A stretch of 64,000 nucleotides of DNA. Source: Phallusia mammillata (Eukaryota). Below, piece after piece: positions 20,996 to 63,540 of the stretch. Where the stretch lies: assembly GCA_965637545.1 (NCBI GenBank), contig OZ281494.1, positions 15,934,001-15,998,000 on the forward strand, read 5' to 3'. The translations under genes and the position numbers were made by a program. How positions within the stretch are numbered: position 1 is the stretch's first letter; every line of letters begins with the position of its first letter. The notes below the pieces were generated by a model, which worked only from the letters and a program-made list of their open reading frames with translations, did no database searches and had not been told where the DNA came from.

Positions 20996-21126
20996 TGTGA
21001 TGTATGTATTTACCGCTAGATGTCGTCCCTGAGTTATGACGTCACGTTTCGTATATAACCGTGTACCGCGTCTTAAACGTGGCAGTCAATACAGGTAACC
21101 GCTTAAAGGTGTGTGCGTTCATGACA
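20996..21126 (+). repeat. 5' LTR
   Basis: TGTGATGTATG...GTTCATGACA; no differences seen from the 3' LTR on base-by-base reading. Confidence 0.97.
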
Positions 21127-21141
21127 TGGTGTCAGAAGTGG
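21127..21141 (+). promoter_or_regulatory. Primer-binding site, complementary to a tRNA-Leu 3' end
   Basis: TGGTGTCAGAAGTGG immediately after the 5' LTR is the reverse complement of ...CCACUUCUGACACCA, the 3' end of eukaryotic tRNA-Leu(CAG/CAA). Confidence 0.75.
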
Positions 21142-21154
21142 TTTTTCAAATAAA

Positions 21155-24100
21155 ATGGAAGGTTCGTTCTCACTGCCGGAAGCTATGCAATGGAGTGGCA
21201 ATGTGTCACAAAACTGGGTTAAGTTTATTAGGGGATTTAGGCTTTATTTGACAGCTGATGGTTATGACGGAAAGGCTGCAAAAGTTAAAACATCTATGTT
21301 GCTCCACGTGTTGGGAGAGCAAGGTCAAACCATCCACTCAACATTTAAATTTGAAGAAGGACAAGAAATGCACTTTGAAACTGTGGTCAATGCCTTCGAA
21401 AGCTACTGTTGTCCGAGAAAGAATATCACCAGCGAGCGATACAGGTTTTTTTCTAGAAATCAAAATGATGGTGAAAGAATAGATGTTTTTATAACCGATT
21501 TAAAAAAACTGTCTAAAAGCTGTGATTTCGGTGAACTTTGCGACTCATTAATCCGAGACAAAATTATTATTGGTATCAAGTGTGATCAACTTCGTCAAAG
21601 TTTGCTGCGGGAAGAGGAACTAACGCTTGAAAAAGCTATTAAAATGTGCATAACAAACGAAACAGTAAGATCGCAAATGACAATGTTTCGATCAACAAAT
21701 TCTACAAGTTTTAGCTTGGATGCTGTAACGCGAACCACGTGGTAATCAATTACCAGCGCCTCGAGTTTGCAGATTCTGTGCCTTGCGACATGACGTCAGA
21801 GCGTGTCCTGCCTGGGGAAGGCGATGCTTAAAGTGTGGTGGAAGAAACCACTTCGCTCGATGTTGCAGTGCAGCTAATCACCCGCAAGCGCAACGCGCGG
21901 ATACAATTCAGACGTACAACATGCAATCTGTAAGTACTATTAGTTCACCAAAAGATTGGCTTGTTGACATTTTTGTGCTTTCATGTACACTTCGTTTTAA
22001 GATAGACACGGGAGCCCAAGTAAATATTTTGTCACGAAATGATTTTCAAAAACTTCAGGGACGTCCATATGTTTCTTCTACTAATATTCGATTGATCTCA
22101 TATACTGGCCACCATATTCCAGTTTGTGGGACAATTAGTTTAACACTTCAATACAGAGAGCAATCATTTACTCTACCATTTGTTGTTGTGGAGATTAATG
22201 CATTGCCTATTATAGGATTAAATGGAGCAGTAATTCTTGGCCTAATAAATAAACTGGAACCGATTGTCAGTGACGAACAAAATTTGCTGTCCAGCTTTTC
22301 AGATTTATTTCGAGGGTTGGGTTGTGTTCCAGGTTGTCACCGAATAAAGACCGATAGCAGAGTTTGTCCCGTAGTCCGTCCCAGCAGAAAAATTCCATTT
22401 GCACTCAAAAACAAACTACAACAGGAGCTACAAAGAATGGAAAGCATGCAAGTAATCAAAAGAATAGAAGAACCAACTAAGTGGGTGAACTCTCTTGTAA
22501 TAGTAGAAAAGAAAAACGGAAAACTAAGAGTTTGCTTAGATCCGCGAGATTTAAATAAAGCAATTTTGCGTGAGCATTTCTGTCTTCCGACTAGAGAAGA
22601 AATTATTAGTCAATTTTCAAATGCTAAAGTATTTTCTAAACTCGACGCTTTGTCAGGGTTTTGGCAAGTAAAGTTGGATGAAGATAGTTCTAAGCTTTGT
22701 ACGTTTAACACTCCGTTTGGACGGTACAGATTTTTGCGCATGCCGTTCGGCATTTGTTCTGCGCCAGAAGTGTTTCACAAGTTGGTGTACATGATGTTTG
22801 AACACATGAACGGCGTTGTAACGTCTATGGACGATATTGTGGTTTGGGGTTCAACTAAGCAGGAACATGACATGAGGCTTAAAAATGTGTTAACGGTTTT
22901 GCAACGCAATAATCTGAAACTCAATAAGGAAAAATGTGTGTTCGGTGTAGACAAGATTACTTTTCTTGGTGAAGTTGTTAGTGCTTCAGGTGTTCAACCT
23001 GATCCAAATAAAGTTCATGCAATAGAGCAACTAAAGCGTCCTCAATCTAAGGGTGACTTGCTGAAATTTTTGGGAATGGTCACGTACCTAGGTCGTTTCA
23101 TTTCCGACTTGTCTACTAAAACATCTTCTTTGCGTTTGTTATTGCATAAACGGAGCAACTGGGAGTGGACGCAAGCACACGAAATGGAATGGAGGAATTT
23201 AAAACGGCTGGTCACAACTGCCCCAGTACTTCGGTTTTTCGACCCCAAGAAATCGATCAAAATTTCGGCAGACGCATCTAAACATGGACTTGGAGCTGTA
23301 ATTTTGCAACAGCATGACAACATGTGGCAGCCAGTGGCTTATGCGGCAAGAGCTTTAACAACCGCTAAAACAAGGTATGCACAAATTGAAAAGGAATTGC
23401 TTGCCCTTTGCATGTGAAAGATTTTATCAGTATGTTTATGGTCAGAAATTTGTGGTAGAAACTGATCACAAACCTCTCATAGCGTTGTTTCTCAAGGAGT
23501 TAAATAACTGTCCGTTGCGCATTCAACGTCTAATGATCCGGTTGCAAAGATTTCATTTCACAGCAGAGTTTACTCCAGGTAAATTCATGCACACAGCTGA
23601 TTTGTTATCAAGATGTGTGGAGAACAGTGTGTCCGTCCAATCGCTTTCTTGTCATAGTGTATGTGAATATGTAGATCTAATTGTATCCGCTATTGATTGT
23701 ATGCCATTAGTTAAACAAAAGTTACAAAGTAAAACCATATGTGACGAACAGTTGCAGTTTGTCATGCGTCTTGTAAATAATGGTTGGCCTTTACATAAGC
23801 GTGCTTGTCCTGTTTTAGCAAAACCCTTTTGGGATGTCAAAAATGAACTTTCTGTTGTTGACGGTATTTTGTTTCGTGGATCTCGAATAGTTGTTCCAAT
23901 GTCTATGCGCAGTTATTTTTTAGAACGTGTGCATGAAGGCCATTTGGGTGAAGTAAAATGCAAAGGACGCGCTCGGGAAAGTATATATTGGCCTGGGTTA
24001 TCCAAAGACATATCTGGTTTGGTATCTTCCTGTGCCATTTGTGCAAAATTCAGGTCACAGCAACAACGCCAACCGTTAGAACCTCACCAAGCTCCTTCTT

Positions 24101-24858
24101 ATCCGTTTCAGAAAGTGGCAACTGACCTGTTCTATTGGAACCGAAAAATGTTTTTGGTAACAGTGGACTACTACTCCGGATATCCAGAAGTAACCCCGTT
24201 GACTACAACTTCTGCGGCGTCTGTTATAAGTGGTTTGAAAACTATTTTTTCCAGGTTTGGAATTCCCGAAACTGTTATTAGTGATAACGGTCCTCAGTTT
24301 TCTAGTGAGGAGTTTGCAAAATTCGCCGAGGAATGGGGCTTTGTTCATTTAACCTCGAGTCCACATTATCCACGATCTAACGGACTGGCTGAGAGGAGTG
24401 TCCAGACAACGAAGCAACTACTTAAAAAAGCTCACGCTAGTGTACAGGATTTTAACAAAAGTTTGTTAATATTTAGGAGTGCTCCTCTCCTTTGCGGAAA
24501 ATCACCTGCACAGCTTCTCATGGGTCGGCAAATCAGACACACGATGCCTCCGGATATCGAAACGTTAAAAAGTTCAACTTGCCGTCCGTTTGGAAAAGAA
24601 AGAAAACAACAAAAGAAGTATTATGACAGGGGAACAAGAAACATGCTGCAATTACAAGTGAACACTCCTGTAAAACTGTACAATACTCAAAACAAACTAT
24701 GGGATCAACAAGGAACTATAGAAAAACAGTTATCTCATCGCTCTTATCTTGTAAAAACTAGTGATGGTGTATTGTATCGGCGTAATCGTGTTCATTTACG
24801 TCCATTGAATGTTATTGTGAATCCTTACCCTTCGAGACGTCAGTTAAGTTCAATTTAA
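21155..24858 (+). pseudogene. Gypsy gag-pol polyprotein broken by two frameshifts
   Basis: Gag 21155-21745; zinc knuckles CRFCALRHDVRACPAWG..C..CGGRNHFARCC lie in the next frame; protease FKIDTGAQVN; RT core RMPFG..SMDDI; RNase H DASKHGLGA; integrase HEGH..C..C and D,D,E (ATD, DNG, LAERSV). Frame changes at about 21729-21742 and about 23405-23410. Confidence 0.95.
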
Positions 24859-24870
24859 ACGAAGGGAAGT

Positions 24871-25001
24871 TGTGATGTATGTATTTACCGCTAGATGTCG
24901 TCCCTGAGTTATGACGTCACGTTTCGTATATAACCGTGTACCGCGTCTTAAACGTGGCAGTCAATACAGGTAACCGCTTAAAGGTGTGTGCGTTCATGAC
25001 A
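24871..25001 (+). repeat. 3' LTR, preceded by polypurine tract GAAGGGAAG (24861-24869)
   Basis: Direct repeat of 20996-21126. Confidence 0.97.
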
Positions 25002-31827: not shown

Positions 31828-33504
31828 ATGAATGTTTCATCTCTACTTGAAGAAGCAAAGGTGGTTTTTGGTAAAACCACAGATTTTGTGGATGTTCAAT
31901 TGACGGCATTTAAACCATGGGAAATTGTTTCAATAACAGTTGTTACACTTGTCCTGACACACCTGGTTTATAATTTTGTGTTTGATCATGAAAAATCCTT
32001 AAGTCAACGGTTGAAGTTGGGCTTTTTCTACTATGTCAAGCGTTTTCCGATTATACGCTCCATCGTAGAAGACAAAATGAAGCCGGTTTTGCATGAAGTG
32101 TCTGCCACCAAGCTATTTCCACTTAAACCTGGCATGACATACAAAAATGTTATGCCTTATGTTGGAAAATCACACACTTCAATTTTAAGAGAAGTAGACG
32201 AATATCTGTCATTGGATACAGTTGACTGGTCAAAGGGTAATGTTTCTGGCACGGTGTATGGAGGTGACCCTGATCTTACCCTTGTTGCTTCTACCATGTA
32301 TCATAAGTTTGCCTGGTCCAACCCTCTTCACCCCGATGTTTTTCCATCCTTGAGAAAAATGGAAGCTGAAGTGGTTCGAATGACTTGTTCGCTTTTCAAT
32401 GGTGATCCTAACGCATCATGTGGTTTTGTTACTACAGGTGGAACAGAAAGTATACTACTGGCCTGCAAGACATATAGAGACTGGGCTTACTCCAAAGGTA
32501 TTAAGAAACCAGAAATGGTCATACCTATAAGTGCACATGCTGCTTTTGAAAAAGGTGCTGCTTATTTCAAGATCAAACTTAAGCATGTTCCAGTAGATCC
32601 AACAACAAGAAAAGTGGATTTGCATGCAATGAAACAAGCCATCAACAAAAACACATGCATGTTGGTAGGATCAACACCTCAGTTTCCACATGGTGTTTTG
32701 GATCCCATTGCAGATATTGCAGCTTTGGGTAAAAGGTATGGTGTTCCTGTTCATGTTGATGCTTGTCTGGGTGGGTTTCTTTTGCCTTTTATGGGAGAGG
32801 CTGGATTTCCTATACAACCATGTGACTTCTCTGTGCCTGGGGTTACAAGCATTTCCGCTGACACCCACAAATATGGATGTGCACCAAAAGGATCATCAGT
32901 GATTATGTACAAATCCACTGAATTTGCACATCACCAATACTTTGTATCACCTGACTGGCAAGGAGGTATTTATGCAACACCAATGTTTGCTGGAAGTCGT
33001 AGTGGAGCAATTGTGGCAGCTTGTTGGGGCACTATGGTGCACATTGGACGTGAGGGATACATCAGCAACACCAGAAAGATTATTTCAACTGCAAGGACAA
33101 TTGAGAATGGTCTTGCACAGATGAACAATTTATTTGTGTTTGGAAAGCCAGAGATGTCTGTCATTGCTTTTGGTAGTATGGATTTTGACATTTTCCGACT
33201 TTCTGGAGAGCTTACCAACAAAGGGTGGAATCTAAATACTTTGCAGTTTCCACCTAGCATTCATTTATGCTGTACTATGCCCCACACTAAACCTGGAGTG
33301 GCAGATAGATTTCTTTCTGATGTGAATGATGCAGTGAATACAATCATGCAGTCACCTAAATCCAAACCAGCAGGTGCAGGTGCAATTTATGGCATGGCTC
33401 AATCCATTCCTGATCGCACCATTGTGTCCTCGATTGCACATGGGTTTCTCGATGCTCTTTATGATACAACTCCATTTGCAAGAGGTGAAAATGGAAAAGC
33501 ATAA
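31828..33504 (+). CDS. SGPL1: Sphingosine-1-phosphate lyase, single coding exon
   Basis: Uninterrupted 558-aa ORF from ATG 31828. N-terminal TM (WEIVSITVVTLVLTHLV), SGTVYGG, NPLHPDVFP, TTGGTESILLACK, HVDACLGGF and PLP-lysine motif SISADTHKYG. Likely 5' UTR intron 31523-31753 (GTGAGT...TTTTATCAG). Confidence 0.97.
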   Translation: MNVSSLLEEAKVVFGKTTDFVDVQLTAFKPWEIVSITVVTLVLTHLVYNFVFDHEKSLSQRLKLGFFYYVKRFPIIRSIVEDKMKPVLHEVSATKLFPLKPGMTYKNVMPYVGKSHTSILREVDEYLSLDTVDWSKGNVSGTVYGGDPDLTLVASTMYHKFAWSNPLHPDVFPSLRKMEAEVVRMTCSLFNGDPNASCGFVTTGGTESILLACKTYRDWAYSKGIKKPEMVIPISAHAAFEKGAAYFKIKLKHVPVDPTTRKVDLHAMKQAINKNTCMLVGSTPQFPHGVLDPIADIAALGKRYGVPVHVDACLGGFLLPFMGEAGFPIQPCDFSVPGVTSISADTHKYGCAPKGSSVIMYKSTEFAHHQYFVSPDWQGGIYATPMFAGSRSGAIVAACWGTMVHIGREGYISNTRKIISTARTIENGLAQMNNLFVFGKPEMSVIAFGSMDFDIFRLSGELTNKGWNLNTLQFPPSIHLCCTMPHTKPGVADRFLSDVNDAVNTIMQSPKSKPAGAGAIYGMAQSIPDRTIVSSIAHGFLDALYDTTPFARGENGKA

Positions 33505-36357: not shown

Positions 36358-39300
36358 TCACAGTAAACCTTGCATCTCTCGCATAAAAGAATCGTACGCA
36401 GCATCTGCGGTGGACTTGGCAGCTTTTCGCTTCTTTTCCGACTTCTGCCTTTCAGCATATGACGAGGCCGTAGGTAGTTCGGGACCAGCTTTGACCGGGC
36501 CACTACGCCCTTTGGTCTCCCGACGAACCCGCAACGATGTTGGCATAAAACGCGTGGTGTCGCCCTTAGGGTTCGCTGTAAGCTGAGGTTTAGCACTAAT
36601 TGTGGCCGCCTGGGTGTCTTCATCTTTATCTGCGACTGGCCGATGGATCAGACTTGGAGGAGCACTGAGTACATTTGGGTTTTGCACCATTCTAATGCCT
36701 TGTTCACCACCTCGGTGGGATATTCCTGGTGGGGGTCCAGGGGGTATAGTAGGAGGGCGACCGGGTGGAGGTCCAGGTGGCATAATACCAGATGGGTTTT
36801 GCATGATGCCAGGTGGCATACCAGGGGGTGGACCTGGGGGTAAACCTGGAGGTGGGCCAGGAGGTCTTGGACGATCTTTTGGATCATCTTTATTATCAGC
36901 ATTGTCATCTTCATCATAATCTGCATTTTCAGGTGGTGCAGGAACAGCTTGTCCAGCTAGCTTGAGCATCATTGCTTGTAAGGGTGTAATGTTGGATGGC
37001 AATGGTTTGGTGTATCCCTTATCACCTTCTTCATCATCATCAGCAAATCTGACTCCTCTCTTTTTGGTTCTTCGGCTGCTTGCTTCATCATCAGAACCAT
37101 GACCTTAAAATAGACATCAGTGTAAGTGGGAATGCTTACTTTGAATCTAGAAGATTGAAGCCAAGTCTTACATTTATCTTTAAACAATGATGTAAGGACT
37201 GCAAGTAACAAAACATGTAAAAATTAGTGATGTGCCGAATCGGCGAAATTTCGATTCGGCCGAAACCGAAGATTCGGCGGTTTTGCCGAATAAATTCGGC
37301 CGAATTACCCGAATCATTTATGAATTCACGCAAAGTCGTATCCTACGCGTCTGACATGAAAATAGAAGTTTATTTACCAGGCAATTAATGCAGAATGGTT
37401 GTGTTTCGTCCTTATTTTAGTTCAGTGGGTTTTAACATTGCCACCCCGACAATGTATTACTGATTTTTTGTCTGCAGTGGGAAAAGCGTCAATGTGTTAA
37501 AAATGACAGGATTTTCGTTGGTAATAAGCAGAAAAGACACGTTTAACGCTTTAAATGGGCGTTCGTAAAAAATTCGGTTGCCGAATCGCAACAAATCATT
37601 CGGCCGAAACCGAATCTTTGCAAAAGTGGCCGATTCGGCCGCATGCAAAAATTCGGCAAACCGAATATTCGGTACATCTCTAGTAAAAATACAATGTTTC
37701 ATCAGCTTGCAAGTTACAAATCATGATGCTTTCTAAACCTTAAACCTGGATAAGTGTCACAATTTTTTCAATGTTTTGACAATCTTATATTGTTACCTCA
37801 AAACACTGTTTTACAAAAGCTTACATCAGCAAACTATCCATGTTTTTTTAGAAGCAATCAATGTATTGCAAATGCAGCAATTATTTGGCCTAAAATTGGA
37901 ACTTTGGCTGGAAATGTTTTGTTTTGAAATGAACTTCAAACACTATATGATTTTCTACACTAAAAGGGATTTTTTTACCTTAGATTTCATTTTACAAGTT
38001 TAAATAGTTTTCACAAATGTTCAAACCCATGTCATCATCATTGTCGTCATCATCTCTGTGCTGAAATTCATCTTCATCATCATCATCAGCTCCTTGATCC
38101 ATCGCATCTCCAAGCTCTGGTCCTTGCTCCGGATCATATGGGTCATCTTCCAACATAATTGCAGGCCTTGGACCTAAAATAAGTCAAGACTCTTTAGATT
38201 TAGCAATCTTAACATTGGATTTAGCTGTAATATTTAAATTGAGGTCATTTCTTTCTCCCCAAACAGTATTTTTTGTTTAGCCAACCCATGTTGATAGTTT
38301 TATTGTAACATTTAAAAAATAATTTAGGAAAGCTTTCCTGTACCGACATGTAGAATTAATTGAATGTAATATTTAAGTGTTTAATATGCCACTTATTGTT
38401 GTACCAACAAAGCACATTTGTATTACATCCAGTGACAATTGCTGGATAGAGTTAGCAGCCCTTCGTATGTCAAGGTAAACATACCTGAAGAGCGCATTGG
38501 GTGCATAGGAATTCCAGGTATCACTCCAGGTTTCACACCTCGAACAAAACTGATAAAAAACATTGAGTTTTAACATTACTGTATTGGGTATTATGGCATT
38601 ATATCATGTAGCTTAAGAAAAAGACAGTGGAGATGCTAACAAACTTAGTATTGATACCATACAAATTTAATATTAAAATATGACAAGAAACATACACTTT
38701 TTTGGATGGTGGGAATCCGGGAGGGGGGCCTGGTGGCATTCTTTTACCCAAAAGGTTAGGAGGGAGACCACTGGGTGGACCTGGAGGCATTTTCTTTAAA
38801 ATGCTTTGTGGTTTAACACCAGGCAGAGGGATGTCTTGGAGTTGTGGTGTGTCAAATGGTGCATCAGGCAATGGAATAGCACCAATTTCAACTGTCTGTG
38901 CATTCTTTACAGACTCATAGTAGTTCTCTTTTTTCTTCCGATTTTGTTTGTATGCCTCCACCATCAGTTTAAATTCACGACCTCTGCTTGGCTCTTCTTT
39001 GAAGTAAAAGTCAACAATGCGAATAAGATTCTCTAGAAGCTTCCGCCGTTTGTCTTTGATAACCTGCAGCATGAACCAAATTGTTTTAAATGTAGTCAGT
39101 CCTACAATCTATCAAATCACAGGGGAAAATGTGTTACATTCTCCATTTATATTGAATTTATGGATTATTTATAATTTTGTTTATTGCATAGGATTCACCA
39201 TGGCAATTGTTTGAGGATTATATAATACATGTTTGTTGAAAACCAATATTATACCAAGTCAATTAAGTGTGAGGATATTCTATCATATATAAACACAGCA

Positions 39301-48206: not shown

Positions 48207-49217
48207 CTGATATTATGCTTGGCAGCAAATAGATTAATTATATTATGGTTATAAGATTACGGCATGAACGATTAATTATCCTTCTATCAGGAATCAGTTC
48301 TTGTCGCGTGAGGATAGTGTTGAGTAATCCAACATCGCATGGTTTCCCAACAAACACAGCGCAGTGCTCTTGTATAGTGTTTTGAAGATGTTGCAAAAAG
48401 ATTATTTGCCCGATTGCTGCGGTGTTAAGCAACGTTTAGGTTAAAGAAGGAAAATGCGCGATCTGACTCCATAATAGAGAATTCTGAAGACTCCTGACTA
48501 ATAACAACTAAAATGTAATACATGGTTTATTAAACAAATATATAAACGACAACAAACGTACAGGTATAACGTTAGCGATAACTTCGTTTAGTCTAAGCTC
48601 TAAGGTAAGTACGTAAGTAAGTGAATCTATTTTTAGTTTGGATGTTTTGTTGGATTAGCAAACGCAAACGCAAATATATAGTAATGCGACAACGCGTCAT
48701 TGTAACTCGGGGCAAAGGTAGTGTCGCTCCGAAACAAATTAAGGAAATAATTATCGTACATGGAAGTCGGCTACAAGAAACGATTTTACGATTGCCTAAG
48801 TGCTGGGACGTGTGGTTTTAGAAAACGCAACATCTAAGGCCGCTAGACTTCAAAGGAAATACAAAATTGCTTTGAGTTTCTGATGTGTCGCTAAAATGAA
48901 AATACACAAAAATATAAAATACACATTGCTACAAAGATACTGAAATCCCGACCCTCCCAAATTGCACAATAATACCATTTTCCCGTGTCGGGGGCAGTTA
49001 ATTAGTGGGATTCGATTGTTAGAAATAAAATAGAGCTATAAGGTCTAAACTAAACAAACTTTTGAAATGTCAGATTGAATGCCTTTTCCTTATTGTTTGG
49101 GTTATAGGCCTATAACTTTTATGGTTTTGTAATACAATTGGGAGTGTTGAATGCCTTTTATGCATTGGTGGTAATTATGTTCTGCTTAATGTAATTTTCC
49201 TTTAGACTGAAATTAGC

Positions 49218-49555
49218 GGTAGAGCTACTAACACCATACGTTTCGCCTGATCCAAAAGTGCTTAATTTTCGATAGCTGGCGTAAAGAGCTGAATTATTTA
49301 TTTAGCGGCTATAAATCGGTTGGATTGGGAAATATTTACATAAAACTTTTACATTAGTAACTAATTTTTTGGGTTAGTTTTATTGAATTTCAAGTGCTAA
49401 TACCCCAACCCTAAAATTACCCCAACCCTAATAGCCTTAACCGTGAGTATTTTTTGAGATATACCGTTTTAAATGAAAAAAGTGCTCTTTGCGCCACCTG
49501 TCGAAAATTAAGCACTTTTGGATCAGGAGAAACGTATGGTGTTAGTAGCTCTACC
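49218..49555. mobile_element. MITE with about 60-bp TIRs and 9-bp TSD (Mutator/Merlin-like)
   Basis: GGTAGAGCTACTAACACCATACGTTTC..GATCCAAAAGTGCTTAATTTTCGA inverted at both ends; TSD GAAATTAGC at 49209-49217 and 49556-49564. Confidence 0.85.
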
Positions 49556-52350
49556 GAAATTAGCACACAATAAAGATCTATAGGCGAATTAGTTAACTCA
49601 GCCTTGATTAACACAGGCAGAATGATTTAATCTACTTTAACGTAAGAGTATATATGTTATTATTGTGACGTCAGTTTTGAGTTAAGATAGATTCGGTCTA
49701 AAAATGCCAGCTAGAAACTTAGGCACGGGTGCCATACTGTCCTTATTTCGAAGGGCAACGTTTTAGAAAAATGTATTGTCCTTATTTCTAGGAAATGTAA
49801 AGTAAGTCTAGACCTGAGCTGTCATGAGATGAATATTTCCTACGAACAAGGAGTTGGTAGAACAGATTGTTTTTGGCAAAAATGGTATGTATAATATGTC
49901 ATGACTCGTATAAGCTAAATGCAAAGATTTGTTCTAAAACGTTTGTTTCGTTTCGTATAAAAGTTTCTTTTGTTGTCCTTATTTTGGGATTAATGGTGAT
50001 GGTATAACTCTGTGGTTAGGCCTGACGTCGTGTGACCACATTCATCAGGTAGCCTACATATCAATAACAGTATATCCCGCATATAATTAATAAAATTAAA
50101 ATTAGTTTTATTTTGTTCTGGTGATAGTTTAGGTCAGAGACTGCAGTATTGCCCGCTTGGGCATAATGCAAATTAGGGTCGTAGTAAGAACCACACTTTC
50201 TTAGTGTGCTTCTATTACACTATTCACTAAAATGGTGCTATGAAATATGGATACTCGCTAATGACAAGAATACGGCCTCCTATTCTGTGATCTATCTATG
50301 GGCAAGTGTTTCATTAACGTTGTTGCCCAGCATAAACGTTGCAAGGTCCCAGTAACGAATACTAAAATAATAACAGCGTTTTTTCAGTGATTTTTTGTCT
50401 CTTACTAAAACCTGACAAATAAACCTTTGCCAGCAGGCAACAATGTCGAATGCTAATGATTCGACTTACGGTTTTAGAATGTATACCTTGGGGGCAAAGT
50501 ATAGGTTTAATTTGGAATAGTGACAGTGCCACATGCCCCCTACTGTAATTGGTTGTGCTCCTAACACAGAAATGTGGCGGTCTGTCAGCTGTTAGCAGAC
50601 TATCAGTCAGAAGCTCATTGCAAGACAATGCACAGTGTAAACAAAGAAATGATTGTAGATGCAATAAAAAAAGTAGTTTTGAGACAAAAATTTGCTGCTG
50701 TGTAGCCTTGGCATATGGAATGAAAACATATGAGCAACGATTTGTCATATATTAGCCGATCGTTGGCAAATTTTCGCATGGACATAGACAGGAAACAATC
50801 AGTGACACAGATAACAATGATCAGTTTGAACCTTGAACCAAAGTCCTTTTGTCGCCCAGTGGACAGTGACAAACTGCAAAGCCACACAACAGACCTTATC
50901 TTTTACAGGCGCGACAAGTCGAACTATATCAAACCTTAAACAGCTCGAACTAAAGTCCACGGAAGTAAACGAGCCGCAACGGGTCAAGCAGACATAAGTG
51001 ACCAGCGGGTAGTGACGAGTTGTAAAGCCGTAAAACATTTGTTATCTGACCGCAGGCACAAGAAAAGGGAAAAAAGGGCGAGCGAAACGGTTGGATAAAG
51101 GCATTTATGGGCGGAGTTGTCAACAACTCTTACCGTGCGTCAGATTTGAGCTGTTGAACCAGTTGTTTCTTTGCCTTTGTAGGTTTGGTGTTAATAAAGG
51201 TACTGTTTTAGGCTTAAAGAATCGAAAGTCAAAGTGCTAGGGTACTTTGTTAAGGAAGATACAAAAAAGACTACTTCTTGCCACCGAGGTGTTTTAAAAC
51301 CGCATTTGGAACACTTATCTGGATGATGTGTAATATATGTAACTACAAGCATCAACATTGCAATGATTGTTTGCTTAATACATAGATCGAAATTTTACGG
51401 ACTGTTATGCGATTAACAAACATTACCTTCGTCCTCTGTCTAAAAACAAAGGCTCTGCTTTCGAAAACTTTCAGGTTTGTTTGCTGTGCTACTATTGGCC
51501 GTATTTTAAACCCGAAAAGAACGTTGGGCTGAGTTCTATTCAAAAGTGCCGTAACCTTTGTCGTATATCTGTTCGTTTATAACTGTCGGCGATGATGCAA
51601 ATCTCTGTAACAAGGTTGTGGTAAGCTGTATATTGAGTAACAGAGCAATGTGCTAAATCAGGAGAAGAGCAGCTAAAGTTTTTCCATGAGCACTTTAAAA
51701 GTTCAGGCAATGTAGAGCAAGCAGAATTTTTTCAAAGCGTTCGTACCGCAAAATGGCAGTTTTGTTGATGATGAAGTACAAAGCACTATTGCGACCAAAC
51801 TGCCACTTTCTAAGTTGGCTTGATTGACCATAGACAAATGTTCAAAGAAGTTTTGGTTTTGTGTTCTGCCACTATTGTTCCATTGTCCATCAATACCGCA
51901 CAAGAATAGGTCAGCTTTGACAGACTGGAAATTAAACAATACCGAATAAAAACGCCACTCCCGATCAGTATCCGCTGATTATAAGCCTCGACACCATTTT
52001 ACCTGGGTCGTATTTCAACGAACTACTCAGGAATTTCACACGTTATGGCAGAAAGCACAACATGATCGCTTCGTCAAAGTGATGCGAGCTTTAAATTAGT
52101 TCTAGTAAACGTGTCACCATTCCAATATACATGCAAGCTGTTGTCTTTAAATATTAGAGGTAGGCTGACCGAAGCACATATCAGTTTCATTTTATGTATT
52201 TCCTAAGTTGGGTAGGTTTTTTGTTCTCTGATAAAAAAAAAACGGATTGGTATGCACACATTATTAATGATGGATTATTTACAGTGGGTATCAACTTGGG
52301 TTATTTCTTTTTTGCAGTATATGACATTGTAGGAGATAGATCGAATCTTT

Positions 52351-53583
52351 ATGATGGACGGCAGTCTGAATGATCTGTTTAGTAACTATTTTATTCTAAT
52401 CAAGCCGAGCAAGTATGCGGAAAAGCAAGTGTTTCAGACATTTGAGTGCTCAGCAGAATGGTTCATGCAGGCGCTTGGTCTTTTAGTTCAGAAGCCAGAG
52501 CCCTGTAAGACATGTTCCAAACTAAAGATCGTCGCTGCAACTCAAACCGAAATGATCAAACAATCTGATGTGGACACTCAGACTTTAATAAGGAAACATA
52601 AATCTAAATTCACAAGTACGGATGAAATCAAAATTGTTCCAAAGGTTGAAAAAGCTACCATGACCCCCAAAGAACCCAAGAAAGAATGCCGGTCGACTAT
52701 GACTAAACCGATGCCAAATGTCAGTGCGGTGAAGCCGAATGTAGCCAATGTAAAGCCGGTCCGAAAACCCACGACAAAGCCAACAGTTCCCAGAACATCG
52801 TCAATATCTGTTCAAACTGATACATGTGATTTGGTTAAACCGTTGAAAAACGAAAAACTGTCGGCAATGTCTACAACAGACAATAATTCACGATCTTCCG
52901 CAAATGCATTGTCTCGCCCCAACATAAACTCTTGTAATGAAAACGAATGTGGTGCGGTTTTCCTCCAATCCGAATTAGATAAGCTTCCCAAAAATGTCTC
53001 TAAGCTATTTATCGACTGCTACCTCTGTTGTCGAATGTCAAAACTTAAATTTACTACACCGTTGCGCTACGTATGGGGCTACCTCAAGCTCCTGCAACAT
53101 TTCATCAACACCGCGAACGGTGTCGCAAGTGGCACCAGACAGCTTTTGTTGAGGTGGGCCTGGCATGTCCAGTGTTTGATCGAAGACTTGGAATATCGCC
53201 CTGCTCCGCATGCAATCATGTTTGACCAATGTGTTCGGGAATGGGCTAATAAACTTGGCGGTTGGTCATTTATGGAGGCACGGGCAAATGCGAAGTTTGA
53301 CTTTACGAAGGTGCGAAGGCAACAAGAAGAATTTGCACCAGAGATTCACAACAATGAAGAACCAACTAAAGACCCACACTGCTTAAAACCGCAGCCGGTC
53401 CCTGGCTCTGAAACCAATCAAAATTTTTGTGACCAGTATGATCGTGATAAACTGCAAAAGTCATTATCTGAACCTGTGGGCCAAATAGCGTCACTGGTGC
53501 CAGTCATTCGTAGTATAAAAAGAGATAATATGTTTGACAACGAGAGAGACACAAATAACAAACGCTGGAAAACTTCAAGATGA
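52351..53583 (+). CDS. Uncharacterised 410-aa single-exon protein; putative divergent Bcl-2-like domain with multiple TQT (LC8-binding) motifs
   Basis: 1233-bp uninterrupted ORF in AT-rich DNA with splice acceptors just upstream (52317, 52332). Coding status is well supported by ORF length. The Bcl-2 assignment rests only on motif resemblance (FLQSELDKL, YVWGYLKLL, EWANKLGGW). Confidence 0.7.
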   Translation: MMDGSLNDLFSNYFILIKPSKYAEKQVFQTFECSAEWFMQALGLLVQKPEPCKTCSKLKIVAATQTEMIKQSDVDTQTLIRKHKSKFTSTDEIKIVPKVEKATMTPKEPKKECRSTMTKPMPNVSAVKPNVANVKPVRKPTTKPTVPRTSSISVQTDTCDLVKPLKNEKLSAMSTTDNNSRSSANALSRPNINSCNENECGAVFLQSELDKLPKNVSKLFIDCYLCCRMSKLKFTTPLRYVWGYLKLLQHFINTANGVASGTRQLLLRWAWHVQCLIEDLEYRPAPHAIMFDQCVREWANKLGGWSFMEARANAKFDFTKVRRQQEEFAPEIHNNEEPTKDPHCLKPQPVPGSETNQNFCDQYDRDKLQKSLSEPVGQIASLVPVIRSIKRDNMFDNERDTNNKRWKTSR

Positions 53584-55895: not shown

Positions 55896-58800
55896 ATGTT
55901 TCAAAATTGTACGCCCTACCGTTATCTACTTGTTCACTTGATCTGTTCACTGTGTGCATTTTCTACATTTATGCTCATGCCATTACAGAGCGAATATCTT
56001 TACAAGGTTAGTGGTTGAATTTTGGAAACTAAACGCAGTTTGAAAAGGAAAAGCATCTCGTGATAAAGCAATGGTTCAATGCGTTAAGTAAACATTTGTC
56101 TCAGTACCACAACTAGAGCAAATTCCAATCTGTGTTCTGATGTGGAAAAAGCGGCAGAAGGAATTGTCCTGCTGCCGATAGTCCCAACTGGGCAATTACT
56201 TGTGCCATCATTAAATTGTTAAAGTTGAACAGAACCCTTTACGGACAATCCCCTTGCCTAATCAATACTTCGTTTATTGACTGCGAACAATCATTTCCAG
56301 TCAATGATGTCATTGCATCTTTGTCCACACGAACGATTAATCATATGTGCATGTAGAATGAGTTGCCACTACTATGTAGTAATTTAGTTGTAATTCCTAA
56401 ATTATTAAAATGGATATAGCATAAACCTGAAGCCAGAGTGGTAAATTTTCCTCGAAGGAGCGGAAAAGATTTAAAACAATCCAGCGATTTTTAGATTTGG
56501 TTCTTAGCGAAATGCCAAATGGATTGTGCTTGGACAAAATTGCCCTCTATATTGTTGTGTTTACTTACCTTTATTTGTCATCGATGGCAAAGGCCAGCAA
56601 ACTGTTTGGCGCTGCGAACTGGTGTACAGGCAGACTTATTTGCGAAGCAACCCTCAGCGTAATAGCGGCTGTTCGGTGCAACAACCATCTAAATCAGCGT
56701 TGCTTACCCGAGGATCATGTCCCCCAAGAGAGCCACAAGGTGTTTTCCAGGGAGGCACAGACATATGAAATCACTAATGATAAGAAACGATTTGTCAGCG
56801 GTGTTGTGACCTAAAGCTTTTCAAACGATATTAAACCGTGAAAGGTTTACCTTCACCAGAATGTCCGATTTAACATTTTTTACGTGGTTCGAAGCCAGGA
56901 AGTTTCCGAGATACGAATCCTGATCAGTTTTTTGTGTCTGTGCATGGGTTAGGCGCCTTGGACCGTTCGGCCAAGTTCCTGCCCCCGACTCACATATTAC
57001 TGTTGACAGAAAGTTGCCGAGTCTCATAACATCACCCACCGAGTTACTACCGAGTGTGGAAATAGCACGTCGTCAGCGACCGATCAAGTCGTAACCAAAG
57101 AAGTTTCCAAGTCAGTGTAAACACTTCAATCCAAGTTCGAATTTTGACAAAGTTTTCTTTTGTGCTATATTACACATAAAACTACATCTCCTAAAAATAC
57201 GATATAGCAGATAGGAACATCTTTACCAGTCACCCACTATCTACCACAGATGGACATTGGAGTTCGACATGACCATGTATATTCCTGCCAGCATCGCTGG
57301 GATCCTTGTAACGTCATGGGGTGACAAAGTCGGTCGCAAGATTGCCATGACTATACCGTTATTGGGGATCTTGCTAAGCAATGGTATTATGGCGGCGTTT
57401 ATTTCTTTTGAGTAAGTTAAACGCTAACATCATAACGTTTGAGCGGAGTTCAAACAGTTTTGTTTTTAGTTGGCCATTGAAGACACTCTTTCTGTACAAT
57501 TTTGTGGCTGGATTGGGGGGATATTACTGGACCCTACTCATGCAAGGATTTGCATATATCAGTGACATAACACGAGGTGATAACAGAGGAATCAGGTGGG
57601 TAAACATTAATATCTACGTATAAGTAAACCTGACAGTCGAAATCAATTTTTTTTCAATATCTGCCTACACCCAATAGTGTGAAATTCGTCAATGTCTTTG
57701 TGCATAATAGGATGGCTATATTGGACACTTGTTTTGGAATAGGAGGTGGTGCAGCTGGGTTGAGCAGTGGATATTGGATCGACAGCCAAGGTTACTTTGC
57801 CCCAGTTCTGGCTTGTACTATCATTGTTGGCGCATCTCTTTTTCTCATTCCTCTACTGCCCGACTCTCACGAGTTAGGACGCCAACTTGCGGACCAAAAA
57901 GGAAGTGAGGCAAATGTGAATGCGGACAATACATTAACCACTTCGACGACGCCTTCCTGTTATGAAACCAGTGACCACGCTAATAAGACATTCCCAAGTA
58001 AGTAACCAGTTAGAGTTGGCCACATAAAATTGGAAAACAGAGTCGATGTGTTTTAAATCAATCGGTTTCTTTTAAACTAACGTCTTTTGTAGAGAGTCCC
58101 AAGAAGGACGGTTACAACCTTATAGATCTCATGCGCTCAGTATGGAACGTTTACAGTAGCGAATTCAGTCAATGTGACAAATGTCACGTCGATGATGATG
58201 CTTGCTACACTGTCACGAATACTTCGTCAGGTATATTCTTAAAATAGCATGGAAACAAAATATATTTTAACATTGCAAATTTACCAAGTTAGATGAAATG
58301 TGTCCACATGGTGGCGGCAAATATCCTGGTCGAGTTTGGAGAATGTGGTGTTACTTGATTTCTTACAATTTCGCGATGTTTACAAGTGTAGGATCGAGTA
58401 GTTTTCTCACAATCTTTCTTCTTTCACAACCTCTTTGCTTTAACCTGGTGTTCATTGGCATTCAGTCGGTAAGTACACAAGTCCACTAATGCACATCTCA
58501 TCGAAACTGTTTCGCATACAGATTTACCATTTATGAAACTTTTGCAGGGGGTACAGTTTGCGACTGTTGCTTTTACACCTTTACTCGTCATAATGTATCA
58601 ACGTCTTCTACTATTTTCAAACAACTTTATAATTATGTCAGGGTTTGTCGGTTGGTTCAGCTATGCACTACTTATGTCATTCGCAAATGAAACATATCTG
58701 GTATTCATAGGTGAGTTAAATTCATAGACGTGTTTAACATATAAAGGCTATGTACAGCACGGTAGCTGTTTAGAATTTCCTGTTGGTACTAGCGTTTACG

Positions 58801-61914: not shown

Positions 61915-63540
61915 ATGGCCTGTGTATCAACAAAGGCGTCTTTTGTATTGCTGTGTTCAATCATTCTTATTGTCACGTATGGCACTTTACTGCCGGCTGT
62001 TTTTAGCACCCAGATTGTGTATTGGGTAAGTTTTGTCGCCAAGGACTTTTTTACATCTTTGTGGTTAATTTGGACCTCATGAAACCATTATCTGTTAACA
62101 GAAAGTTGCCGAGTCGCATAATACTACCCACCGAGTTACTGATAATTGTGGAAATAGCACGTCATCAGCGGTTGATCACCTTGTAGCCAAAGAAGTTTCC
62201 AAGTAATAAAAGCTTTTTTATATTTCAAAAACTTAAACATCGTGACATTAACTCTAGCAATCATCTTCGGTCTTCCACAGATGGACATTGAAGTTCGACA
62301 TGACCATATATATTCCTGGCAGCATCGCAGGAATCATAGTGACTTCATGGGGTGACAGAGTCGGTCGAAAAAATGCCTTGACAGTACCGGTTTTGGCAAT
62401 CGCTCTCAGCAACGCTTGTATGGCGGCGTCCATTTACTTTAAGTGAGTAAAATGCCTGATGCATTGACACATTTATCGCGAGGGATTGAACTTTTTTTGT
62501 TTAGTTGGCCGATAAAGTCACTTTTTCTGTACAATTTTGTGGCTGGATTGGGGGGATACTACACGACTATGCTCATGCAAGGTTACGCTTATGTCAGCGA
62601 CATTACACCAAGCGATTTTAGATGAATCAGGTATATAAAATCTGTAAAGATATATATAAAGAGCACACATAAACTCGATTGTTTAATCTTTTTTTAATCG
62701 CGATATTGCTTATATTGCCCAATTTCAGCCACTTTTTATGTGGCCTTTGTACATTGTGACAACGTCTTACCGTTTAATAGAATGGTGATTCTGGACACAT
62801 GCTTGGGTATAGGCGGTGGTGCAGCTGGGTTAAGTAGCGGTTATTGGATCGACAGTCAAGGTTTCTTTGTTCCTGTTATGGCTTGTACCTTCATGGTTGT
62901 CGCATCACTTTTTCTTATCCCTCTGCTACCCGACTCCCACAAGTTGCAACGCCAACTTTCGAGCAACAAAGAAAATGAGGCAAATGTGAATGAATATCAA
63001 AATCCAACTGTTTCAACGACGTCTGATTATGGATCATGTGACCAAGTTAATAAAACAATCGACGGTGGGTAATGAATTGCAACTGAACATTTTAAAAATA
63101 TGTATTTTATTCAAAATGTTAGTTATTCGAAATTTTTTTGAATTTTCTTGAATAATAAAGTTTCCAATTACATCTTGTGCAGAAAGCCCTCCGACGAAAG
63201 GTTACAACCTTATAGATCTCCTACGCTCAGTGTGGAATGTTTACAGCAGCGAATACAGCCACTGCGACAAATGTCACGTCTCTGATAATGCTTGTAACAG
63301 TCTCACAAAAACTTTGACAGGTATGTTTTTAAAATGTAGAGAAATAAAATCCTAATATCTAATTTTCGAATTTACTAGACAAAAAGTGTCCACATGGTGG
63401 CGGCAAATATGCTGGTCGAGTTTGGAGAATGTGGTGTCAATTTCGCGCAGTTTACTGGTACAGGGTCGGTTGATTTATTGACAATTTTTCTACTTTCACA
63501 ACCGCTCTGCTTCACCCCGGTGTTAATTGGCATTGAATCG
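61915..63540 (+). pseudogene. Tandem SLC46-like paralogue with nonsense codon and frameshift (3' exons not in window)
   Basis: Exons 61915-62025, 62102-62202, 62281-62442, 62505-62630, 62781-63064, 63183-63320, 63379-63540 mirror copy 1. TGA at 62623-62625 where copy 1 has GGA. A 14-bp deletion between 63437 and 63438 removes TACTTGATTTCTTA (58352-58365 in copy 1). Confidence 0.9.

What the first reader, a model, noticed from the sequence alone, without database searches (positions are those of the whole stretch)
52351..53583. Orphan single-exon gene combining a putative divergent Bcl-2 fold with five LC8-type TQT motifs and no membrane anchor
Seen: aa 200-310 (about 52948-53280) carry, in Bcl-2 order, GAVFLQSELDKL (BH3-like), LRYVWGYLKLLQHF (BH1-like; canonical NWGRIVAFF) and VREWANKLGGWSF (BH2-like; canonical WIxxxGGWxxF). 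The BH1 W to BH2 W spacing is 56 aa, about 12 longer than BCL2. The low-complexity N-terminal half holds AATQTE (62-67), VDTQTL (74-79), KATMTP (101-106), RSTMTK (114-119) and ISVQTD (152-157). The C-terminus is hydrophilic and ends KRWKTSR. Established: DYNLL/LC8 binds TQT-like motifs, and BH3-only BIM and BMF each carry one such site. Inference: this could be a soluble or nuclear, LC8-scaffolded multi-BH protein, an architecture I do not recognise from known Bcl-2 members. The intronless CDS hints at retroposed or viral origin.
Basis: partly seen in the sequence, partly recalled or inferred. Interest (0 to 1): 0.8.

Follow-up and report, generated by a model that had tools for sequence, protein, structure and literature searches.

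The report
Ascidian-only gene, not a Bcl-2
The 410-residue open reading frame is a real single-exon gene of the sea squirt Phallusia mammillata that belongs to a small, fast-evolving sea-squirt-only protein family; its supposed Bcl-2 likeness finds no support, but its dynein-light-chain (LC8) type motifs are more than chance.

Summary
The window is Phallusia mammillata: a neighbouring gene is 100% identical to that species' sphingosine-1-phosphate lyase.

The gene is not an orphan. Weak but full-architecture relatives exist, including two tandem single-exon genes in the ascidian Clavelina lepadiformis. All share:
- a short N-terminal module;
- a disordered linker;
- a helical domain of about 130 residues.

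Some relatives add a C-terminal CCCH+CCHC zinc finger, which is absent here.

No Bcl-2 relationship was detected. Pfam PF00452 is not hit at E<=10 for any member. Family profiles hit no Bcl-2 chain in the PDB. Foldseek on a low-confidence AlphaFold model gives only noise. The 'BH' signature residues are not conserved among relatives; only G-x-W-x-F is.

The five TQT-like motifs are enriched (5 against about 0.6 expected). All four other family proteins carry exactly one V-G-[IV]-[QN]-[TV] motif in the linker, which resembles the published GIQVD-type LC8 site.

Best reading: a lineage-restricted scaffold protein, probably dimerised by LC8. Binding and expression are untested. Nothing supports retroposed or viral origin.

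The parts
52351..53583 (+). Single-exon CDS of 410 aa plus stop; a member of an ascidian-restricted protein family
   Evidence: ORF listing. Homology to P0001, P0002 and P0003/P0008 and to the Clavelina paralogue.
52304..52317 (+). Pyrimidine tract ending in AG: a splice-acceptor-like site 34 nt upstream of the ATG (5'-UTR intron or trans-splice acceptor; inferred only)
   Evidence: Read directly from the sequence.
52330..52332 (+). In-frame TAG between the acceptor-like site and the ATG, so the CDS cannot extend upstream through that acceptor
   Evidence: Read directly from the sequence.
52375..52485 (+). Conserved N-terminal module (aa 9-45); invariant L16, P19 and F38; no known family
   Evidence: Alignments A1 and A3. 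No Pfam or PDB hit.
52486..52935 (+). Disordered K/S/T/P-rich linker (aa 46-195) that carries the five LC8-type motifs
   Evidence: pLDDT 21-39 in both models. Composition. Not alignable between relatives except for one short motif.
52528..52551 (+). LC8-type 8-mer 1 (aa 60-67): TQT anchor, E at +2, small residue at -2. It is this protein's only match to the loosened pattern [AG][TIV][QN][TV], and is taken (inference) as the counterpart of the family's V-G-[IV]-[QN]-[TV] motif
   Evidence: Motif rules from PMC6607443.
52564..52587 (+). LC8-type 8-mer 2 (aa 72-79): TQT anchor, D at -4, L at +2
52645..52668 (+). LC8-type 8-mer 3 (aa 99-106): TMT anchor, K at -3, P at +2
52684..52707 (+). LC8-type 8-mer 4 (aa 112-119): TMT anchor, R at -3, K at +2 (weakest flanks)
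52798..52821 (+). LC8-type 8-mer 5 (aa 150-157): VQT anchor, S at -4, D at +2
52939..53334 (+). Conserved helical domain (aa 197-328) with six predicted helices; invariant Y240, L247, H272, D292, G303, W305, F307 and A310. No detectable relation to Bcl-2 or to any known family
   Evidence: AF2 with alignment, pLDDT 50-74. Alignment A2. Negative searches.
53335..53580 (+). Hydrophilic C-terminal tail (aa 329-410), predicted disordered, ending in a basic patch. No zinc finger, unlike some relatives; no TM segment
53714..53719 (+). First ATTAAA downstream of the stop: a possible polyadenylation signal (inferred)
   Evidence: Pattern scan.

Best explanation
This is a genuine single-exon protein-coding gene of the ascidian Phallusia mammillata. 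It belongs to a fast-evolving family seen so far only in ascidian-type sequences.

The family architecture is:
- a short conserved N-terminal module;
- a long disordered linker;
- a conserved helical domain of about 130 residues and unknown fold;
- a disordered basic tail.

Some members end in a CCCH+CCHC zinc finger of the RNA-binding type. This copy, like relative P0001, lacks it. The helical domain is not a detectable Bcl-2 domain.

Inferred mechanism: the linker is a client site for the dimeric hub protein LC8/DYNLL. The other four family proteins carry one GIQ/GVN-type motif each. The Phallusia protein carries five TQT/TMT/VQT sites, two pairs of them 12-13 residues apart. LC8 dimers would zip two chains together in parallel. 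That would bring two N-modules and two helical domains into register, as in other multivalent LC8 clients. The family's zinc fingers suggest the assembly works in RNA regulation.

Shown: the gene, the family, the architecture, the motif enrichment, and the absence of Bcl-2 signal. Inferred: LC8 binding, dimerisation, and the RNA-related role.
For: Organism: the neighbouring ORF is 100% identical over 558 aa to P. mammillata sphinganine-1-phosphate aldolase.

Family:
- phmmer against 1.84 billion representatives gives three hits, E 1e-6 to 4e-4.
- tblastn of those hits back to the window gives E 1e-9 to 2e-12, and only at this ORF.
- One hit clusters with Clavelina lepadiformis CAK8683565.1.
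- That gene and a tandem paralogue are single-exon.
- The N-module and helical domain are shared across all five proteins.

Zinc finger in relatives: it matches muscleblind and CPSF4 CCCH fingers, E 6.5e-4 to 0.03.

LC8:
- Five anchor-type motifs against about 0.6 expected.
- They lie in a region with pLDDT below 40.
- Three of the five have P/D/E at +2, and two have K/R at -3; both are listed as favourable in PMC6607443.
- V-G-[IV]-[QN]-[TV] occurs exactly once in each of the four other family proteins, each with shuffle P about 0.001.
- That motif resembles the published GIQVD consensus (PMC2700376) and the phage-display optimum, which has G at -2 and E at +2.
Against:
- PMC6607443 stresses that many TQT peptides do not bind LC8, that Q at position 0 is strongly preferred, and that TMT is verified in only one client. 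Both Clavelina proteins have N at position 0, and two Phallusia sites are TMT.
- The motif patterns were defined after seeing the sequences.
- The alignment-based model draws a helix over residues 55-86. Its pLDDT is about 30, so this is unreliable, but if real it would disfavour strand-type binding.
- No transcript evidence for the Phallusia gene was available. The exact protein is not in the 15-billion-protein collection.
- Only five family proteins are known, so conservation statements are thin.
- The RNA-related role rests on a zinc finger that this copy lacks.
Confidence: 0.5

Rival explanations
1. Same gene and family, but the short motifs are not LC8 sites. The conserved V-G-[IV]-[QN]-[TV] motif binds some other partner, and the extra T-Q/M-T strings in Phallusia are by-products of a T/Q/K/P-rich disordered linker or are phospho-sites. 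The protein would act through its N-module and helical domain as an adaptor, perhaps pairing with zinc-finger-bearing paralogues.
For: The Clavelina proteins have N where LC8 clients have Q. PMC6607443 reports that deviations from the anchor and poor flanks often abolish binding, and that many TQT peptides are non-binders. Two of the five Phallusia sites use the rarely verified TMT anchor. The linker is rich in S/T (35 of 150 residues).
Against: Composition-preserving shuffles of the linker alone still give only 0.55 expected against 5 observed. The family motif in P0001 and P0002 matches the published GIQVD-type LC8 consensus closely. The 12-13-residue spacing of the motif pairs gives each 8-residue site its own stretch of chain, with 4-5 residues between sites.
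Confidence: 0.33
2. One reading: residues 200-310 form a very divergent Bcl-2 fold (BH3-BH1-BH2 order), so the protein is a soluble, LC8-scaffolded multi-BH protein, possibly of viral or retroposed origin.
For: The three strings exist in that order. The domain is all-helical, with six predicted helices over about 130 residues. G-x-W-x-F, part of the BH2-like string, is invariant in the family. The structural model is too weak to exclude any helical-bundle fold.
Against: - No PF00452 hit at E<=10 for the window protein, for four relatives, or for the five isolated domains.
- No Bcl-2-family chain at E<=10 in PDB searches with the sequence, the full-length profile or the domain profile.
- Foldseek against the PDB: best E 0.41; BCL-2 at rank 32 with E 2.8, probability 0.06, TM 0.23, rmsd 14 A. 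Nothing in BFVD.
- The BH3-like Asp and the BH1-like W and G are not conserved.
- Intron-less CDSs are the family norm, and there are no retrocopy or element hallmarks around the gene.
Confidence: 0.04
3. The ORF is a decaying or non-functional paralogue: a zinc-finger-less remnant of the family that is no longer expressed and stays open by chance or recent origin.
For: It lacks the C-terminal zinc finger of three relatives. The exact protein is absent from the protein collection, which does hold a P. mammillata UniRef/nr entry for the neighbouring lyase gene. No close relative was found by word-based search.
Against: A 410-codon open frame in DNA of about 40% G+C is very unlikely by chance (inference from stop-codon frequency). 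Both conserved modules keep every family-invariant residue. Relative P0001 also lacks the finger and has its own stop, so a finger-less form is a normal variant. The start lines up with the relatives' starts.
Confidence: 0.08

Closest known systems
Clavelina lepadiformis CAK8683565.1 (UniRef100_A0ABP0G057, 'C3H1-type domain-containing protein', 571 aa) and its tandem paralogue (L001:16624-18111)
   Same: Same N-terminal module, disordered linker with one LC8-like motif, same helical domain with the invariant Y, L, H, D and G-x-W-x-F residues, basic tail, and single-exon CDS.
   Different: Only 20-25% identity. The Clavelina proteins end in a CCCH+CCHC zinc finger that the window gene lacks. 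They have one motif with N at the anchor centre, where the window protein has five Q/M-centred motifs. There is no shared synteny: the Clavelina pair lies between dynein heavy chain genes, and in that assembly the lyase homologue is recorded on a contig of a different size (20.8 against 14.2 Mb).
Multivalent LC8/DYNLL clients (ASCIZ/ATMIN with 7-11 sites; Bassoon with 3; Panoramix with 2)
   Same: Several TQT-type 8-mers strung along a disordered region next to folded or nucleic-acid-binding modules. LC8 acts as a dimerisation clamp (PMC10046861 and PMC7861614, listed; PMC2700376; motif rules in PMC6607443).
   Different: No sequence homology to any of them; the resemblance is in the way of working only. 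Binding is untested. Two sites use the rare TMT anchor.
   Same: An all-helical domain of similar size, a G-x-W-x-F string reminiscent of BH2, and TQT-type motifs as in BIM/BMF (BIM = BCL2L11 is listed among LC8 binders in PMC6607443).
   Different: No profile, sequence or structural match. BH1 and BH3 signature residues are not conserved in relatives. Six rather than eight predicted helices. No TM anchor.
CCCH zinc-finger RNA-binding proteins (muscleblind-like, CPSF4/CPSF30)
   Same: The fingers of the family's longer members match these at E 6.5e-4 to 0.03. This gives the family a likely RNA context.
   Different: The window protein has no finger. Outside the finger nothing is shared.

Membership tests
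Bcl-2 family (PF00452) | Significant match to the Bcl-2 family profile | tested here: not met
   hmmscan against Pfam-A at E<=10 gives no PF00452 hit for the window protein, for P0001, P0002, P0008 or the Clavelina paralogue at E<=1, or for the five isolated helical domains at E<=10.
Bcl-2 family (PF00452) | Sequence or profile similarity to solved Bcl-2-family structures | tested here: not met
   phmmer, the full-length family profile and the domain profile against all PDB chains at E<=10 return no Bcl-2-family chain.
Bcl-2 family (PF00452) | Bcl-2 fold: helical bundle around a central hydrophobic hairpin with a BH3-binding groove | tested here: inconclusive
   In the AF2 model with a 6-sequence alignment the domain has pLDDT 50-74 and pTM is 0.32. 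Foldseek against the PDB gives nothing at E<=0.001, with BCL-2 6o0k at rank 32, E 2.8, TM 0.23. The model is too weak to settle the fold.
Bcl-2 family (PF00452) | BH1, BH2 and BH3 signature residues kept among orthologues | tested here: not met
   In alignment A2 the BH3-like D209 aligns with S/R/S/N, W242 with Y/Y/D/S, and G243 with A/G/C/G. Only G303, W305 and F307 are invariant.
LC8/DYNLL client | 8-residue motif with a TQT-type anchor in a disordered region | tested here: met
   Five motifs at aa 60-157 lie in a region with pLDDT below 40. Enrichment is 5 against 0.55-0.74 expected.
LC8/DYNLL client | Favourable flanks (+2 P/D/E, -4 H-bonding, -3 basic, no pre-anchor proline), as in PMC6607443 | tested here: inconclusive
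   +2 is E, L, P, K, D. -3 is A, V, K, R, I. -4 is V, D, E, C, S. There is no proline at -5 to -2. LC8Pred itself was not available.
LC8/DYNLL client | Motif conserved in orthologues | tested here: inconclusive
   Each of the four other family proteins has one V-G-[IV]-[QN]-[TV] motif (shuffle P about 0.001 each). Two are Q-centred and two are N-centred. One Phallusia site fits the loosened pattern; the other four have no counterpart.
LC8/DYNLL client | Physical binding to the LC8 groove | not testable with these tools
   No multimer prediction or binding data were available.
Ascidian family of Clavelina CAK8683565.1 | N-terminal module, disordered linker and helical domain with the invariant Y, L, H, D and G-x-W-x-F residues | tested here: met
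Ascidian family of Clavelina CAK8683565.1 | C-terminal CCCH+CCHC zinc finger (the basis of the 'C3H1-type' name) | tested here: not met
   tblastn of the finger-bearing relatives finds no finger anywhere in the window. P0001 lacks it too, so it is not universal in the family.

The most novel reading that the evidence does not exclude
The helical domain shared by this ascidian family could still be an extremely divergent Bcl-2-type bundle that sequence methods and a shallow-alignment model cannot see. That would give a soluble, LC8-laddered, in some members zinc-finger-tipped, Bcl-2-fold protein unique to tunicates. A less extreme version is that the domain is a new fold, and the family is a tunicate-specific LC8-dimerised RNA-regulatory scaffold.
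Probability: 0.04. Interest if true: 0.75.

Novelty: new member of a known kind. Interest (0 to 1): 0.3.

Why it matters
The eye-catching part of the finding, a new anchorless Bcl-2 architecture in a chordate, does not hold up, so its interest falls. What remains is modest but real:
- A taxonomically restricted, intron-less ascidian gene family with two unclassified conserved modules.
- A short linear motif, conserved in an otherwise unalignable linker, that looks like an LC8 site.
- Members with and without an RNA-type zinc finger.

If LC8 binding is real, this would be a lineage-specific example of LC8-driven dimerisation. It would also be a case of motif multiplication, from one site to five, within one family. 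The case further shows that BH-motif matches read by eye need checking against orthologues.

Tried and rejected
- Word-indexed protein searches with the ORF and with alignment A1 found nothing new.
- Exact look-ups of the ORF found nothing.
- The single-sequence AF2 model was useless, with pLDDT 37.
- The alignment-based model reached only pLDDT 50-74 in the helical domain. The Foldseek results against the PDB and BFVD are therefore noise-level and were used only as 'no support'.
- Profiles of the N-module, the helical domain and the whole protein hit nothing meaningful in the PDB or Pfam. I treat the E 0.03 match to a designed helical bundle and the E 0.49 match to a dynein heavy chain as chance.
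- Rfam and tRNA scans of the window were empty.
- I looked for an orthologue next to the sphingosine-1-phosphate lyase gene of a 71%-identical relative; there was none within reach.
- Repeat searches found no LTR, TIR or target-site structure around the gene.
[quoted passage not shown] This could not be tested, because no tool returns those proteins by name and they did not come back as hits. I claim no relationship.
- Searches for the run and protein accessions and for a description of this family in the paper library found nothing.

Full report
**1. The observation**

The ORF listing gives one long ORF at 52351..53583 on the + strand: 410 aa with an ATG start. It is the only ORF above 130 aa within 10 kb. 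No segment is hydrophobic enough for a membrane anchor: the maximum 19-residue Kyte-Doolittle mean is 0.91. G+C is 43% in the ORF against 38-39% in the flanks.

A pyrimidine tract ending in AG lies at 52304-52317. An in-frame TAG follows at 52330-52332. The coding sequence therefore starts at 52351 and lies in one exon. The start also lines up with the starts of the relatives.

**2. Whose genome**

The ORF at 31828-33501 is 100% identical over 558 aa to sphinganine-1-phosphate aldolase of Phallusia mammillata (UniRef A0A6F9DSN7). The next named hits are the Clavelina and Ciona proteins at 67%. The window is ascidian DNA. I took no contig for human.

**3. Not an orphan**

A full phmmer scan of 1.84 billion representatives gives three weak hits: P0001 at 1.3e-6, P0002 at 2.2e-5 and P0003 at 4.2e-4. 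Searched back against the window, they hit only this ORF, at E 1e-9 to 2e-12.

P0003 clusters with CAK8683565.1 of the ascidian Clavelina lepadiformis, a 571-aa protein auto-named 'C3H1-type domain-containing protein'. In the Clavelina assembly that gene is a single uninterrupted ORF. A second single-ORF paralogue lies 4.9 kb downstream; it matches CAK8683565.1 at E 2e-16 and the window protein at E 1e-7.

The alignments show a common plan:
- An N-terminal module of about 40 residues, with L16, P19 and F38 invariant.
- A long linker that does not align between species.
- A helical domain with invariant Y240, L247, H272, D292, G303, W305, F307 and A310.
- A hydrophilic tail.

P0002 and both Clavelina proteins end in a CCCH finger immediately followed by a CCHC knuckle. 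A profile of this segment hits muscleblind-like and CPSF4 fingers in the PDB at E 6.5e-4 to 0.03. The window has no such finger anywhere, and P0001 lacks it too.

**4. The Bcl-2 idea**

I tested it five ways.
- (a) Pfam. No PF00452 hit at E<=10 for the protein or for five isolated helical domains, and none at E<=1 for four relatives.
- (b) PDB by sequence. phmmer, a full-length family profile and a domain profile return no Bcl-2-family chain at E<=10.
- (c) Structure. The single-sequence model was useless. The six-sequence model gives six helices between 197 and 328 at pLDDT 50-74, with pTM 0.32.
- (d) Foldseek. Nothing in the PDB at E<=0.001 and a best E of 0.41. A BCL-2 chain appears at rank 32 with E 2.8, TM 0.23 and rmsd 14 A, which is noise. 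BFVD gives only disorder-on-disorder matches with TM at or below 0.16.
- (e) Conservation. The residues that make the strings look like BH motifs are not kept. The BH3-like Asp aligns with S/R/S/N, and the BH1-like W and G vary.

Membership is therefore not supported. Because the model is weak, the fold itself remains formally open, and I give that reading about 4%.

**5. The LC8 motifs**

The five sites are real and enriched. [TVI][QM][TV] occurs 5 times against 0.74 expected on a whole-protein shuffle and 0.55 on a linker-only shuffle, and no shuffle reached 5. Strict TQT occurs 2 times against 0.07-0.09 expected. They lie where both models are disordered.

I judged the flanks against the published rules: an 8-residue motif; a TQT anchor; P/D/E favoured at +2; an H-bonding residue at -4; a basic residue at -3; a small residue at -2 in the phage-display optimum; TMT verified only in myosin Va; and many TQT peptides that do not bind (PMC6607443). 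By those rules sites 1, 3 and 5 have good +2 residues, sites 3 and 4 have a basic -3, and sites 2 and 5 have D or S at -4. Sites 1/2 and 3/4 are 12-13 residues apart.

The more telling result is at family level. Each of the four other proteins has exactly one V-G-[IV]-[QN]-[TV] in its otherwise unalignable linker, each with shuffle P about 0.001. The P0001 and P0002 versions are close to the second published dynein-light-chain consensus, GIQVD (PMC2700376). In Phallusia, site 1 (A-A-T-Q-T-E) is the only match to the loosened pattern, so I take it as the counterpart.

Against this, both Clavelina versions have N at the anchor centre. All patterns were chosen after looking at the sequences. No binding or complex prediction could be run.

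**6. Origin**

An intron-less CDS is the rule in this family. The neighbouring lyase gene is also intron-less, here and in a relative. I found no flanking direct or inverted repeats and no tandem repeats around the gene, and no poly(A) tract follows the stop in the sequence read. There is no similarity to viral protein models. I see nothing that points to a recent retrocopy or a viral gene.

I left out one step: a scan of the viral-contig collection with the family proteins. A match could have fetched a locus of an animal virus, and I could not tell whether the bar covers that.

**7. Best explanation and rivals**

Best explanation (0.5): a real gene of an ascidian-restricted family. The linker recruits LC8 dimers that hold two chains in parallel. 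The family context suggests RNA regulation through the zinc fingers of the longer members.

Rivals:
- The motifs serve another partner or none (0.33).
- A decaying finger-less paralogue (0.08).

**8. Comparison and novelty**

The closest relative is the unnamed Clavelina protein. The closest analogues in way of working are multivalent LC8 clients such as ASCIZ (PMC10046861) and Panoramix (PMC7861614), with no homology to either.

I had the ascidian maternal factors Pem and Zf-1 in mind (PMC5927453). They did not come back as hits and I could not fetch them, so I claim no link.

Novelty: a new member of a known kind, namely a candidate LC8 client belonging to an uncharacterised lineage-restricted family. 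Interest 0.3.

The window also holds a Ty3/gypsy-type retroelement. That hints at where its pol changes frame. I have deleted nothing, I give no place in this report, and I joined, mended or aligned nothing of it.

Noticed in passing
window 20996-25001 (+): Ty3/gypsy-type LTR retroelement. Its 131-nt terminal direct repeats are 100% identical, which suggests a young insertion. Pfam finds RT, RNase H, integrase zinc-binding and integrase core domains. gag is a separate ORF, and pol is interrupted once by a change of frame.
   Followed up: partly
window 31828-33504 (+): Intron-less sphingosine-1-phosphate lyase gene, 100% identical to the P. mammillata UniRef entry A0A6F9DSN7. This identifies the organism. 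The gene is also a single ORF in a 71%-identical relative.
   Followed up: yes
window 36358-39072 (-): Two proline-rich ORFs of 214 and 157 aa with PPGPPP-type repeats. They look like exons of one gene. There is no Pfam hit, so they remain unidentified.
   Followed up: partly
window 57257-58005 and 62740-63072 (+): Two very similar ORFs of about 108-110 aa, 5 kb apart. One has a weak MFS_1 match (E 0.007). They are probably exons of tandemly duplicated transporter genes.
   Followed up: partly
window 49217-49289 / 49484-49556: Inverted repeat with 73-nt arms, 95% complementary, 194 nt apart. It is a MITE-like or hairpin element about 2.8 kb upstream of the gene.
   Followed up: no
L001 (Clavelina lepadiformis CAUIVY010000062.1) 1-21716: The two Clavelina family genes lie in tandem between two dynein heavy chain genes. 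This is curious given the LC8 (dynein light chain) motifs, but there is no such neighbour in the Phallusia window, so it is probably coincidence.
   Followed up: no
L002 and L004: The 2.6-kb Logan contig that encodes P0002 is colinear (99.2% identity) with a low-coverage ENA genomic contig. On that contig the same gene is called in three pieces, with 17 gapped positions in the alignment. This looks like assembly error rather than introns.
   Followed up: partly
protein P0007: A 51-aa Mycoavidus 'hypothetical protein' sits in the same 90% cluster as the Clavelina protein but looks unrelated. It is probably a clustering artefact.
   Followed up: no
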